From: Octopus bimaculoides
Taxonomy: Eukaryota
Reading direction: 5' to 3'
Assembly: GCF_001194135.2 (NCBI RefSeq)
Contig: NC_068999.1
Coordinates: 3,139,247-3,203,246 of the forward strand
Length of the DNA stretch: 64,000 bases
Below, piece after piece: positions 5,192-28,928 of this stretch; the first letter of the stretch is position 1, and every line of letters begins with the position of its first letter. The notes below the pieces were generated by a model, which had not been told where the DNA came from, did no database searches, and saw only the letters and a list, made by a program, of their open reading frames with translations. A program made the position numbers and the translations under genes.

Positions 5192-6290
5192 TCATAATTG
5201 AGTCATGGAGGCTTTAAAATGTGACATCTGGTTACTTGGGGTGTTGTAATCTCGTGGAGGAAGAGGGCAAGCTTGATGGCCCCTTGATGAAAGAGCTGGA
5301 GAATGGCTGAGTTCCAAGAGCCCTATAATTTTGTGAAGAGTTTTGTCCCTGTTCTTAGAAAATTTGTTTGTGGAGTGTAAATCTGATTGTGAGTTGTAAT
5401 GTGATGTCGATGTGGAAGCGTAGGATAGTGTGCTCAGCGAACCGTGCACTGAATATGACGGTTCATCTGTTAAGTCTGAAAACTCTGAGCCCGTTGTGAT
5501 ATAGTCTGGGTGTGGCTCACTGGGAATATCACTGTCTGAGCTGATGTGTTCATAATGATGTGTCACAACATTGCTGTAGATATGAGAACAATCAGAATCA
5601 GATTCATCAATGTTTTCTCTGAACAAATCCTTCAGGGAAGGATCATCAACAATGTCGTAAAAGTTATTTGTCTGAGGTGAATCTGGTTTATCATACATCT
5701 CATATAAACTGTCCTTCGATGATGACACCATATTGGGAATCTCATACATATTCTCATCTGATGCATCGTATAAACCACTGATACTTTTCGGATAGTTCCC
5801 TTTTAATATGCTTTTATCCGGTTTATCATAAATATTTCTACTCCATAATTTCTCTGATTCACTATCAGACGAGTCTTCGACATCTTCATATGTATGCTTT
5901 TCTTTGTTGCAGTTCAGTGTTGTCTGTGAGTCACTGTCGTCAGAGTGATACAACATTCTCGCAGACTTCACAGGATGACGACTTTGGGTCTCCGTTTCTA
6001 AAGATTCTTTACTGTGTCGGCGAGTTCGTCTCTTGCTGACTGATAGCGTTGAAGTCTGGAATCCAGTGTCCGTTTCATCCGTTTGATTAGTTTTGCTCTC
6101 GTTACTATGACGACCTGAGTCAGAGTCAAACTCAAAAGTATGGTTAATTATTGAGGCTCTGTTGCTTCTGGTAGAGTTTGAAGAATTTTCATGCTGACCA
6201 TTAATATCTGTTGTGACTGTCAAGTCAGTAGAATCATACAACGAGCGATTTTTCTTGCACTTATGGACAATATGATGGTTTTTCATTTCT
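5192..6290 (-). CDS. Cadherin exon 25: Ser/Asp/Thr/Tyr-rich cytoplasmic tail ending ...KASMTQL*
   Basis: 364-codon non-repetitive ORF; attttgacag acceptor 4 nt before the ORF ATG, in phase with exon 24. Confidence 0.9.

Positions 6291-28928: not shown

What the first reader, a model, noticed from the sequence alone, without database searches (positions are those of the whole stretch)
5192..28928. Complete 25-exon, 7-EC cadherin of the PCDH15/CDHR5/CDHR2-like group: a candidate cephalopod microvillar or stereociliary link protein
Seen: a phase-consistent 1258-aa model with a signal peptide, 7 ECs, about 120 aa of non-EC membrane-adjacent sequence, a TM helix and a tail ending TQL*. EC1 has an N-terminal Cys and an F-strand Cys (DCTF...RITC). 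The EC2-3 linker is DED..PP.F rather than DxNDN, and EC3 carries PPI.A.DGDR.IN..I.Y. Known: this combination characterises PCDH15/Cad99C, CDHR5 and some Drosophila solitary cadherins. PCDH15, CDH23 and CDHR2 carry a SEA-fold membrane-adjacent domain, and several of these proteins bind harmonin through C-terminal class I PDZ motifs. Inference: a lineage-specific link cadherin with an unusual 7-EC count, possibly for microvilli-rich cells (statocyst or lateral-line hair cells, rhabdomeres, sucker or gut epithelium). It is distinct from the well-known cephalopod clustered protocadherin expansion. Many exons are invisible in the ORF track, so automated models may be fragmented.
Basis: partly seen in the sequence, partly recalled or inferred. 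Interest (0 to 1): 0.72.

Follow-up and report, generated by a model that had tools for sequence, protein, structure and literature searches.

The report
Octopus short PCDH15-like membrane cadherin gene
This is a real, expressed 25-exon octopus gene for a cell-surface cadherin that resembles the proteins linking hair-cell and gut microvilli in vertebrates; it belongs to an unstudied mollusc family, its sequence is already in RefSeq, and its function is still a guess.

Summary
I rebuilt the minus-strand gene independently: 25 GT..AG exons, phase-consistent, 3777 nt, 1258 aa, ending MTQL*. The model is identical to RefSeq XP_014785618.1 (Octopus bimaculoides, misnamed "fat-like cadherin-related tumor suppressor homolog").

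Spliced RNA contigs from three runs confirm 15 junctions by sequence and the rest by exact length. Both assembly gaps are intronic. A DNA contig shows that the gap at 22832-22852 really hides 117 nt.

Architecture:
- signal peptide
- a 75-aa Cys-bearing N-terminal module that no tool could confirm as an EC repeat
- six Pfam cadherin repeats
- a juxtamembrane domain whose AlphaFold model best matches PCDH15 EC11-MAD12 and CDH23 EC25-MAD28
- one TM helix
- a 366-aa tail with a class I PDZ ligand

Homologues that share the MAD, TM, juxtamembrane motif and T-x-[LF] end occur only in molluscs (octopuses, cuttlefish, chiton, oyster).

The "PCDH15/CDHR5-like" reading is partly supported. MAD fold, Cys spacing, a marginal TM match and the PDZ ligand fit it. 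EC-repeat similarity is generic, and no tree was possible. The microvillar-link function is untested. The claim that automated models would be fragmented is wrong for this species and right for O. vulgaris and Sepia.

The parts
29448..29511 (-). Upstream non-coding exon of a long-5'UTR isoform. It is spliced to 28973 and carries a 25-codon uORF (MTRMLQFDWRFTNRIPQTGRLKTKQ*). About 917 nt of further 5' sequence in the X6 contig are not placed.
   Evidence: X6 contig pieces 29448-29511 and 28853-28973 are contiguous in the record. Donor CGG|gtaggt and acceptor ttcag|ATTCC; uORF translation.
28853..28973 (-). Exon 1: 5'UTR (28973/28956 down to 28929), ATG at 28928, signal peptide MDVRLSSKTIYLLLIILLTFKFSLE, ends in phase 1. 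An in-frame TAA lies 4 codons upstream of the ATG.
   Evidence: RNA contigs end exactly at 28853.
27122..27169 (-). Exon 2: start of the N-terminal module, DCTFQSSVHIKETLAP (Cys27).
   Evidence: The loose end at 25793 reads the exon 2 3' end.
25674..25792 (-). Exon 3: N-terminal module (Cys72). An equivalent exon exists in cuttlefish at about L002:17371.
   Evidence: Joint 25231/25674 in 3 RNA runs. Sepia equivalent.
25184..25231 (-). Exon 4: PTKRFKLRITCTTNNK (Cys92, the putative F-strand Cys).
   Evidence: joint to exon 3, and a loose end that reads the start of exon 5.
23829..23927 (-). Exon 5: end of the N-module and start of the first Pfam EC (…SLSVDIPE).
   Evidence: RNA records run directly from 23829 to 22823.
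22832..22852 (.). Assembly gap in intron 5, 9 nt upstream of the exon 6 acceptor. Its true length is 117 nt.
   Evidence: X7 DNA contig: 22700-22831 = record 20-151 and 22853-22961 = record 269-377.
22716..22823 (-). Exon 6: first Pfam EC.
20717..20833 (-). Exon 7: first Pfam EC (LDYD).
   Evidence: Exact 117-nt spacing in the X6 record. The loose end at 19809 reads the exon 7 3' end.
19970..19979 (.). Assembly gap inside an (ATC)n tract in intron 7.
   Evidence: The exon 7/8 joint spans it.
19701..19808 (-). Exon 8: G strand plus the non-canonical linker VKDEDTKPPVF.
   Evidence: Joint 19303/19701.
19201..19303 (-). Exon 9: second Pfam EC (APPILAYDGDRSINQTINY).
18798..18910 (-). Exon 10: second Pfam EC (LNRE).
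17715..17891 (-). Exon 11: canonical linker LDINDNLPKF and start of the third Pfam EC.
16961..17095 (-). Exon 12: third Pfam EC (LDRE).
16478..16627 (-). Exon 13: canonical linker LLDDNDNWPMF and start of the fourth Pfam EC.
   Evidence: The loose end at 16474 reads the start of exon 14.
15471..15673 (-). Exon 14: fourth Pfam EC (weak, 25 bits).
   Evidence: Identical to the RefSeq model. Exons 14-20 total 852 nt in the X4 and X6 records.
14691..14829 (-). Exon 15: calcium-free-type linker (MIVTKNTTKPEDNS) and start of the fifth EC.
   Evidence: length check.
13926..13993 (-). Exon 16: fifth EC core. A cuttlefish equivalent lies at about L002:51174.
13481..13562 (-). Exon 17: fifth EC (LDYE). 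A cuttlefish equivalent lies at about L002:53249.
12309..12440 (-). Exon 18: linker IKDINDHIPTF and start of the sixth Pfam EC.
11458..11522 (-). Exon 19: sixth Pfam EC (ASDNDREPPNN).
9690..9852 (-). Exon 20: end of the sixth Pfam EC.
9442..9536 (-). Exon 21: membrane-adjacent domain (MAD), beta1-alpha1. Carries a synonymous T>C (mRNA sense) at 9483, Leu769.
   Evidence: Joint 8817/9442; SNP; fold.
8725..8817 (-). Exon 22: MAD.
7862..7927 (-). Exon 23: MAD.
6641..6811 (-). Exon 24: last MAD helix plus the TM helix ELSLLILACLLFICCIICVSIIY.
   Evidence: Marginal match to the PCDH15 TM helix.
5192..6290 (-). Exon 25 coding part: a 366-aa Ser/Asp-rich tail with the juxtamembrane motif RSLYDSTDL, repeated acidic Tyr motifs and the C-terminal MTQL*.
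4660..5191 (-). 3' UTR (about 532 nt).
   Evidence: The X4 and X6 contigs end at 4662 and 4660.

Best explanation
Shown: this is an intact, transcribed Octopus bimaculoides gene encoding a type I membrane protein of the cadherin-related branch. Its parts, in order, are:
- a signal peptide
- a short Cys-bearing N-terminal module
- six EC repeats, with canonical DxNDN calcium linkers at only three junctions
- a ferredoxin-like membrane-adjacent domain (MAD)
- one TM helix
- a 366-aa acidic, Ser-rich tail ending in the class I PDZ ligand MTQL

Shown: it belongs to a family found so far only in molluscs (octopuses, cuttlefish, chiton, oyster). Members share the MAD, a TM helix, a juxtamembrane S/T-[LI]-Y-[ED]-[ST]-Q-E-[LM]-K motif and a T-x-[LF] C-terminus. 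The cephalopod proteins carry two more ECs than the chiton protein.

Inferred: the N-terminal module is a compact EC1, stapled by a Cys27-Cys92 disulfide as in PCDH15 and CDHR5.

Inferred: the protein works like the MAD-bearing link cadherins PCDH15, CDH23 and CDHR2. Its ectodomain tip would bind a partner on a neighbouring apical protrusion. The MAD would promote parallel dimerisation at the membrane. The C-terminal PDZ ligand would tie the protein to a PDZ scaffold (harmonin- or NHERF-type) and so to actin.
For: Gene and expression:
- Model built, identical to XP_014785618.1.
- Spliced RNA contigs in three runs.
- Only 3 O. bimaculoides RNA runs hold the transcript, and other runs of the same studies do not, which points to restricted expression.

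Domains:
- Pfam Cadherin at 167 bits, six repeats.
- One TM helix and 17 N-glycosylation sequons.

MAD:
- AlphaFold model of EC7 plus the juxtamembrane region: pLDDT 73.5, order beta-alpha-beta-beta-alpha.
- Foldseek PDB ranks 1-9 are PCDH15 EC11-EL/MAD12 (6C10 at 3.5e-13, 6BXZ, 6EET, 6C13, 6C14) and CDH23 EC25-MAD28 (8TRI). These align over about 215 columns. Among the other listed hits, those that superpose closely (rmsd 2-10 A) cover only the roughly 125-column EC; the longer alignments to multi-EC chains have rmsd of about 12-18 A and weaker E-values.

Family:
- A full HMMER scan of 1.8 billion representatives with MAD+TM+JM finds only O. vulgaris, chiton and oyster proteins.
- The alignment shows the shared motifs and C-terminus.

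PCDH15-like traits:
- Cys27/Cys92 spacing of 65, against C5-C73 in CDHR5 (PMC8691648).
- The chiton EC1 aligns its F-strand Cys with PCDH15 C99.
- The best PDB hit of the MAD-TM-JM profile is the PCDH15 TM helix (E=0.049).
- CDHR2 and CDHR5 both end in a C-terminal PBM, and in the cited paper's yeast two-hybrid screens CDHR2 recovered USH1C/harmonin and CDHR5 recovered E3KARP and also bound EBP50 (PMC10916864).
- MADs are known or predicted in PCDH15, CDH23, PCDH24, FAT and CELSR (bioRxiv 10.1101/460097).
Against: - No localisation, partner or tissue identity is known, because run labels are coded.
- The N-module has no Pfam hit and no PDB sequence hit. Its AlphaFold model is unusable (pLDDT 42.6; Foldseek meaningless). 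Both EC1 status and the disulfide are therefore conjecture.
- The middle Cys72 is not conserved in cuttlefish, and I could not find a cuttlefish exon 4 equivalent.
- EC similarity is highest to CELSR1 and is generic.
- MADs also occur in FAT and CELSR, which are not link cadherins.
- The fourth MAD strand is not modelled.
- The TM match is marginal.
- A T-x-L end is a common motif.
Confidence: 0.55

Rival explanations
1. It is the shortened true orthologue of PCDH15/Cad99C in molluscs and not a separate family. On this view the mollusc lineage reduced 11 ECs to 5-7.
For: - MAD fold with PCDH15 as the top structural hit.
- PCDH15 TM helix as the best profile hit.
- An EC1-type Cys pair, with colinear alignment of chiton EC1(end)-EC5 to PCDH15 residues 92-555.
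- The MTQL/MTHL end resembles PCDH15-CD3 MTKL (the CD3 end is from my own knowledge).
Against: - EC number is 7 or 5, against 11.
- HMMER scores to PCDH15 are no better than to CDH23, CELSR or the protocadherins.
- The MAD sequence itself gives no PCDH15 hit; only the TM segment aligns.
- I could not check whether octopus also has an 11-EC PCDH15, because the homology searches were exhausted.
Confidence: 0.12
2. It is a CDHR1 (photoreceptor cadherin, PCDH21)-type six-EC cadherin that gained an N-terminal cap and a MAD. It would act at photoreceptor membranes.
For: - One BLASTP HSP aligns octopus aa 128-755 (all six Pfam ECs) with residues 37-671 (all six ECs) of amphioxus CDHR1-like P0014: 113 bits, E=2e-29.
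- Amphioxus CDHR1 proteins were among the best named hits.
- They share the D-x-D-D-x-P-P-x-F linker and the DGD.GIN..I.Y motif.
Against: - A second HSP in a shifted register scores almost the same (102 bits), so colinearity is not specific.
- CDHR1 has no N-terminal Cys module and no MAD (P0014 sequence; Pfam).
- CDHR1 is classed as Cr-2, with a different tip (PMC8691648).
- There is no similarity in the TM helix or tail.
Confidence: 0.1
3. It is a FAT/CELSR/CDH23-like signalling or polarity cadherin, as the automated names suggest ('fat-like cadherin-related tumor suppressor homolog', 'cadherin-23-like', 'protocadherin Fat 1-like').
For: - The best HMMER PDB hit is CELSR1 (243 bits).
- MADs are also predicted in FAT and CELSR (10.1101/460097).
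- Names.
Against: - The CELSR1 score is a sum over many repeated ECs.
- Pfam finds no EGF, LamG, GAIN or 7TM domains at significance.
- It has only 7 modules, against 9 to 34 or more.
- The five species carry five different names, which shows that best-hit naming is unreliable here.
Confidence: 0.08
4. It is an annotation or assembly artefact, or a pseudogene.
For: Two assembly gaps lie within the locus, and many exons are tiny.
Against: - The ORF is uninterrupted and every splice site is canonical.
- Full-length spliced transcripts are present.
- The O. sinensis protein is 94% identical.
- Both gaps are intronic.
Confidence: 0.01

Closest known systems
PCDH15 (vertebrates) / Cad99C (Drosophila), Cr-3 cadherin-related
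   Same: - Type I cadherin with a Cys near the mature N-terminus and a second Cys on the putative F strand.
- Non-canonical D-x-D-D/E linker after the second module, followed by a PPI.A.D.DR motif (HMMER alignment).
- Ferredoxin-like MAD between the last EC and the membrane.
- TM helix with LL.LA...I.CCI.
- C-terminal class I PDZ ligand.
   Different: - 7 modules against 11 ECs.
- The N-module is about 75 aa and has no detectable sequence match to PCDH15 EC1.
- There is no RXGPP motif (PCDH15 feature recalled from my own knowledge).
- The tail is unrelated apart from its end.
- The MAD sequence is not detectably similar; only the predicted fold matches.
CDHR5 (mucin-like protocadherin), Cr-3
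   Same: - Short ectodomain.
- EC1 A-F strand disulfide with nearly the same spacing: C5-C73 against C2-C67 in mature numbering (PMC8691648).
- C-terminal PBM (PMC10916864).
   Different: - CDHR5 has 4 ECs plus a mucin-like domain and no MAD.
- No CDHR5 chain appeared among the 60 best hits shown in any of the PDB sequence searches.
CDHR2 (PCDH24) and CDH23, Cr-2 MAD-bearing link cadherins
   Same: - A MAD next to the membrane (CDH23 EC25-MAD28 at Foldseek ranks 5, 6 and 8).
- A PBM that binds harmonin, as shown for CDHR2 (PMC10916864).
   Different: Cr-2 tips have an extended N-terminal strand with an extra calcium site and no EC1 disulfide (PMC8691648). They have 9 and 27 ECs.
CDHR1 / PCDH21 (amphioxus CDHR1-like P0012, P0014)
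   Same: Six ECs that align end to end with the six Pfam ECs here, and similar linker and EC motifs.
   Different: No N-terminal Cys module, no MAD, and a short unrelated tail without a T-x-L end (P0014 ends ...NLRKY).
Mollusc homologues: Liolophura sinensis XP_064618178.1, Saccostrea echinata XP_061196044.1, Acanthosepion pharaonis CAE1257263.1, O. sinensis XP_036367292.1, O. vulgaris CAI9736702.1
   Same: N-module Cys pattern (chiton), MAD, TM helix, juxtamembrane SLYESQELK-type motif and T-x-[LF] end.
   Different: - The chiton protein has the N-module plus 4 Pfam ECs, against 6 here.
- Tails differ in length and sequence.
- The Sepia and O. vulgaris database entries lack exons.

Membership tests
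Cadherin superfamily | Tandem extracellular cadherin repeats (Pfam PF00028) above the gathering score | tested here: met
   PF00028 at 167.2 bits against a cut-off of 28.8. Six separate repeats were found when the protein was scanned in pieces; four of these exceed 28.8 bits on their own.
MAD-bearing cadherins (PCDH15, CDH23, CDHR2, FAT, CELSR) | [quoted passage not shown] | tested here: met
   The AlphaFold model (pLDDT 73.5) shows beta118-123, alpha127-145, beta148-156, beta171-178 and alpha187-210. Foldseek ranks 1-9 are PCDH15 and CDH23 EC-MAD structures aligned over both domains. The last strand is not modelled and the MSA had only 5 sequences.
Cr-3 subfamily (PCDH15, CDHR5) | Disulfide between strands A and F of EC1 | tested here: inconclusive
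   Cys27 and Cys92 are present, 65 residues apart (CDHR5: 68), and conserved in O. sinensis and chiton. The structural model is too poor to check geometry.
Cr-3 subfamily (PCDH15, CDHR5) | EC1-3 sequence grouping with PCDH15/CDHR5 in a tree or by best reciprocal similarity | tested here: not met
   The N-module profile finds no cadherin in the PDB. EC1-3 scores are highest to CELSR1, and PCDH15 is not distinguished from CDH23. No tree could be built because reference sequences were not obtainable here.
PCDH15/Cad99C orthologue group | Eleven ECs plus MAD12 | tested here: not met
   There are 6 Pfam ECs plus one N-module.
PCDH15/Cad99C orthologue group | Conserved TM helix and C-terminal PDZ ligand | tested here: inconclusive
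   The PCDH15 TM helix is the best PDB hit, but at E=0.049. The MTQL end is present.
CDHR5 | Four ECs followed by a mucin-like repeat domain, no MAD | tested here: not met
   There is no mucin-like region, and a MAD is predicted.
CDHR1/PCDH21 | Six ECs directly followed by a short stalk and the TM helix; Cr-2-type tip | tested here: not met
   The six ECs align, but the extra N-module and the MAD are absent from the amphioxus CDHR1-like proteins, the only CDHR1 sequences examined.
Clustered / delta protocadherins | Six or seven ECs encoded by one large exon, no MAD | tested here: not met
   The ectodomain is spread over 24 exons and a MAD is present.
FAT / CELSR (names given by automated annotation) | EGF, LamG, GAIN/7TM modules and at least 9 to 34 ECs | tested here: not met
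   Pfam finds none of these. The 7tm_3 hit has E=0.08 over the single TM helix.
Link cadherins of actin protrusions (function) | Localisation at the tips of microvilli or stereocilia, and binding to harmonin/NHERF-type PDZ scaffolds | not testable with these tools
   Only the PDZ-ligand motif is visible, and the tissue identity of the expressing RNA runs is coded.

The most novel reading that the evidence does not exclude
Molluscs possess their own family of short, MAD-bearing, PCDH15-like link cadherins. The chiton has 5 modules, and cephalopods have 7 after inserting two ECs. Through a disulfide-stapled mini-EC1 tip and a PDZ-anchored tail, these proteins would form inter-protrusion links in a microvillus-rich sensory or absorptive cell type, such as rhabdomeric photoreceptors, sucker or statocyst receptor cells, or the gut brush border. 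That would be an invertebrate counterpart of the tip-link and intermicrovillar-link systems, built from a different family member.
Probability: 0.2. Interest if true: 0.6.

Novelty: new variant of a known kind. Interest (0 to 1): 0.38.

Why it matters
MAD-bearing cadherins are the force-bearing links of vertebrate hair bundles and brush borders. A compact 7-module relative restricted to molluscs would be useful in three ways.
- It would show how such links were assembled and resized in evolution.
- It would give a small, tractable ectodomain for structural work.
- It would provide a marker, and a handle for perturbation, for whichever cephalopod cell type builds ordered protrusions with it.

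More practically, five species carry five contradictory automated names (FAT-like, cadherin-23-like, Fat 1-like, tumor-suppressor-like, cadherin-87A-like), and two database models lack exons. The family needs curation.

Tried and rejected
I switched to repeat-free sub-windows.
- The tail-only homology search gave a single hit from another octopus.
- The third homology search, with the MAD-TM-JM profile, returned nothing, which exhausted that tool before PCDH15/CDHR5 reference sequences could be collected. No phylogeny was therefore possible.
- The N-module profile against PDB sequences gave only chance hits: MS2 coat protein, cystatin F and MyBP-C.
- The AlphaFold model of the N-module plus the first EC, built on a 3-sequence alignment, had pLDDT 42.6. 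Its Foldseek hits were meaningless, with no E<=0.001.
- The cuttlefish locus L002 never appeared in the Python sandbox. I located exons by degenerate DNA patterns and frame translations instead. This recovered equivalents of exons 3, 16 and 17, but not of exon 4.
- Paper searches for the accession numbers, and for cephalopod PCDH15 or statocyst links, found nothing relevant.
- Rfam and tRNA scans of the window were empty.
- I rejected RNA editing as the explanation for the one RNA/DNA difference. It is U>C in mRNA sense and synonymous.
- I rejected a paralogous cadherin copy in the window, because tblastn found no hit outside the gene.
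Full report
**Checking the observation.** The window is AT-rich (36% GC), full of microsatellites, and contains eight N-gaps. 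The candidate gene lies on the minus strand. I worked from stop-to-stop translations and from a tblastn of the best homologue. I read each candidate exon with its flanks and assembled a model by script.

The result is 25 exons with a canonical GT..AG at every intron and consistent phases. The CDS is 3777 nt, or 1258 aa, and ends ...HFKASMTQL*. An exact-sequence look-up shows the protein is identical to RefSeq XP_014785618.1 / UniProt A0A0L8FZZ4 of Octopus bimaculoides. It clusters with O. sinensis XP_036367292.1, which is 1255 aa and 94% identical.

**Transcript evidence.** Three RNA runs of the same organism hold spliced contigs: X4 (4288 nt), X5 (2124 and 2194 nt) and X6 (5335 nt). Laid on repeat-free sub-windows, they show the following.
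- Joints 8/9 to 12/13, with loose ends that read exon 7 and exon 14.
- Joints 21/22 to 24/25, and a 3' end near 4660.
- Joint 5/6.
- Joint 3/4, with loose ends that read exon 2 and exon 5.
- The exon 1 donor at 28853.

Distances within the contig records match my model exactly: exon 7 is 117 nt, exons 14-20 together are 852 nt, and exons 1-4 are 291 nt plus 28 nt of 5'UTR in X5. The only RNA/genome difference is a synonymous U>C at 9483, Leu769. Run X7 behaves as DNA, with even depth across introns.

**The two gaps.** The gap at 19970-19979 sits in an (ATC)n tract in intron 7. The gap at 22832-22852 ends 9 nt before the exon 6 acceptor. RNA joins 23829 directly to 22823. An X7 DNA contig bridges the gap with 117 nt where the assembly writes 21 N. 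Alignment with the cuttlefish protein also runs straight across this junction (…IFTPE|NTAVNTSV against …DIPE|TTSVNSSV). Neither gap affects the coding sequence.

**Extent of the gene.** The gene reaches beyond the reported coordinates. The X6 isoform splices an upstream exon (29511-29448) to 28973 and carries about 917 nt more 5' sequence that I could not place. That exon adds a 25-codon uORF in the main frame, closed by the TAA four codons before the main ATG.

**Architecture.**
- Pfam finds Cadherin (PF00028, 167 bits) and nothing else of significance.
- Scanned in pieces, six repeats are recognised at about aa 126-207, 257-334, 349-436, 459-531 (25 bits), 599-630 (18 bits) and 665-752.
- The first 80 mature residues, the 115 juxtamembrane residues and the tail have no Pfam match.
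- Only three linkers are canonical (DINDN at 335, DDNDN at 439, DINDH at 644). The others are DEDTK, a calcium-free-type TKNTTKPED, and KVKRD after the N-module.
- There is one hydrophobic TM segment at about aa 867-889, with 17 N-glycosylation sequons in the ectodomain. The tail is Ser/Asp-rich with repeated Y[DE]-containing motifs.

So '7 ECs' is six verifiable ECs plus a 75-aa N-terminal module.

**The juxtamembrane domain.** An AlphaFold model of the last EC plus this region was built on a five-sequence mollusc alignment. It has mean pLDDT 73.5 and the order beta-alpha-beta-beta-alpha. Foldseek against the PDB ranks the following in places 1-9, each aligned over about 215 columns covering both domains:
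- PCDH15 EC11-EL (6C10, E=3.5e-13)
- PCDH15 EC10-MAD12 (6BXZ)
- PCDH15 EC9-MAD12 (6EET)
- the PCDH15-LHFPL5 cryo-EM chains (6C13, 6C14)
- CDH23 EC25-MAD28 (8TRI)

Among the other listed hits, those that superpose closely (rmsd 2-10 A) cover only the roughly 125-column EC, and the longer alignments to multi-EC chains have rmsd of about 12-18 A and weaker E-values. This is the ferredoxin-like membrane-adjacent domain described for PCDH15 and predicted for CDH23, PCDH24/CDHR2, FAT and CELSR (De-la-Torre et al., bioRxiv 10.1101/460097). The caveats are a shallow MSA and an unmodelled last strand.

**The N-terminal module.** It carries Cys27, Cys72 and Cys92. In mature numbering, Cys2 and Cys67 lie 65 residues apart. 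Gray et al. 2021 (PMC8691648) describe the Cr-3 hallmark as an A-to-F strand disulfide, C5-C73 in CDHR5 and C11-C99 in PCDH15.

The chiton homologue has a longer N-terminal domain that aligns with the octopus module: SC..WQAMVHVNES with DC..FQSSVHIKET, and RMTC with RITC. It ends in a degenerate linker, INEYSPLF. HMMER aligns its F-strand Cys with PCDH15 C99. That is the case for a compact EC1.

Against it, the module profile finds nothing cadherin-like in the PDB. The AlphaFold model is unusable (pLDDT 42.6, though it shows seven strands in the first 82 residues), and its Foldseek hits are noise. EC1 status and the disulfide remain inference.

**Relatives.**
- The tail alone finds only another octopus.
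- The EC core finds a cuttlefish protein at 47% identity. After that come generic cadherins at 25-30% identity: CELSR, CDH23, amphioxus CDHR1 and protocadherins.
- A full HMMER scan of 1.8 billion representative proteins with MAD+TM+juxtamembrane sequence returns three proteins: O. vulgaris CAI9736702, chiton Liolophura sinensis XP_064618178 and oyster Saccostrea echinata XP_061196044.

The alignment shows a shared MAD, a shared TM helix, a juxtamembrane motif (SLYDSTDL / SLYISQELKL / TIYETQELKL / SLYESQEMKI) and a shared end (MTQL, MTHL, LTHF, DTKL). The chiton protein has the N-module plus four Pfam ECs, so cephalopods gained two repeats.

The family carries five different automated names, and two entries are incomplete. 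I found cuttlefish equivalents of octopus exon 3 (about L002:17371), exon 16 (about 51174) and exon 17 (about 53249), all absent from CAE1257263. The O. vulgaris model lacks several exons, including the TM exon.

**Which known family?** Sequence scores do not decide.
- PDB searches with the ectodomain, or with its first 318 residues, rank CELSR1 first through summed repeats. PCDH15, CDH23 and the protocadherins follow close together.
- The D-x-D-D/E linker and the PPI.A.DGDR.IN..I.Y motif do align with the PCDH15 EC2-3 linker and EC3.
- Amphioxus CDHR1-like proteins carry the same features. Their six ECs align end to end with the six octopus ECs (113 bits), and a shifted register scores 102 bits.
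- The best PDB hit of the MAD-TM-JM profile is the PCDH15 TM helix (LLALAFIIILCCI against LLILACLLFICCI), but only at E=0.049.

Architecture excludes several candidates:
- FAT/CELSR: no EGF, LamG, GAIN or 7TM.
- Clustered protocadherins: this ectodomain spans 24 exons and has a MAD.
- CDHR5: no mucin domain here, and a MAD is present.
- CDHR1: no MAD and no N-module (seen in the amphioxus CDHR1-like proteins).
- Strict PCDH15 orthology: 7 modules against 11.

The best description is a mollusc family of the cadherin-related branch that combines a Cr-3-like tip with a MAD and a PDZ ligand.

**Likely mechanism.** The steps shown are that the protein is membrane-anchored and expressed, with six ECs, a MAD fold and a conserved PDZ-ligand end. 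The remaining steps are inferred by analogy with PCDH15, CDH23 and CDHR2:
- trans binding through the tip
- MAD-assisted parallel dimerisation
- anchoring through a PDZ scaffold; CDHR2 recovers harmonin, and CDHR5 recovers E3KARP and also binds EBP50 (PMC10916864)

Only three O. bimaculoides RNA runs hold the transcript, while other runs of the same studies hold none of its words. That suggests restricted expression, but the tissues are coded. From my own knowledge, cephalopod statocyst hair cells are kinociliary. A microvillar setting therefore seems more plausible to me than a stereociliary one.

**Verdict.** The sequence is already in public databases, but the family is uncharacterised and misnamed. 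Interest is moderate.

Noticed in passing
window 29448-29511 and 28929-28973 (minus strand): A long-5'UTR isoform (X6 contig) uses an upstream exon that carries a 25-codon uORF, MTRMLQFDWRFTNRIPQTGRLKTKQ*, in the main frame. The O. vulgaris database model starts with this peptide fused to exon 4. About 917 nt of further 5' transcript are unplaced and may lie beyond the 29661-29938 gap.
   Followed up: partly
window 22832-22852: The assembly gap written as 21 N corresponds to 117 nt in a DNA contig of run X7.
   Followed up: yes
window 22900-23140; also 11165-11364, 13666-13753, 16074-16199, 27970-28158, 28304-28380 and 14 more sites across the window: A SINE-like interspersed repeat of about 190 nt, present in 20 copies in 64 kb at 75-82% identity and in both orientations. 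Word depth in the DNA run X7 reaches about 5x10^5, and the repeat is abundant in RNA contigs. ARAGORN and Rfam give no tRNA or RNA-family match.
   Followed up: partly
window 18998-19227, 29104-29247, 8107-8273, 6437-6603: Other intronic or upstream segments show very high read depth in the DNA run X7 (bin means from about 1.5x10^4 to 1.2x10^6). Within this window they have few or no further copies, apart from microsatellite matches.
   Followed up: partly
window 37368-37790 (+), 53927-54274 (+), 59707-60696 (-): Open reading frames that look like fragments of reverse transcriptase or LINE-type retrotransposons (for example ...GRLYDACVQTAMLHDSETWAVT..., ...VDFSKVFDSVNRKAMFFIL..., ...WSGHIRRMNEHRLPKICFYGEL...). 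The rest of the window holds no second cadherin.
   Followed up: no
window 9483: All three RNA runs read G where the assembly has A on the + strand, which is U>C in the mRNA (CTT>CTC, Leu769, synonymous). It is a polymorphism or an assembly error, not A-to-I editing.
   Followed up: yes
L002 (Acanthosepion pharaonis CAHIKZ030001236.1) at about 17371, 51174 and 53249: The cuttlefish orthologue's database protein (CAE1257263.1, 898 aa) omits exons that are present in its genome: the equivalents of octopus exons 3, 16 and 17. The O. vulgaris entry CAI9736702.1 likewise lacks several exons, including the transmembrane exon.
   Followed up: yes
window 5192-6290 (tail, aa 893-1258): The cytoplasmic tail contains eight further acidic Tyr motifs beyond the juxtamembrane RSLYDSTDL (TYEDVED, IYDKPD, LYDASDE, MYEIPN, LYEMYDKPD [two tyrosines], FYDIVDD, HYEHISSDSD). 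These may be phosphotyrosine or sorting signals. They are conserved between octopus species but not in cuttlefish.
   Followed up: no
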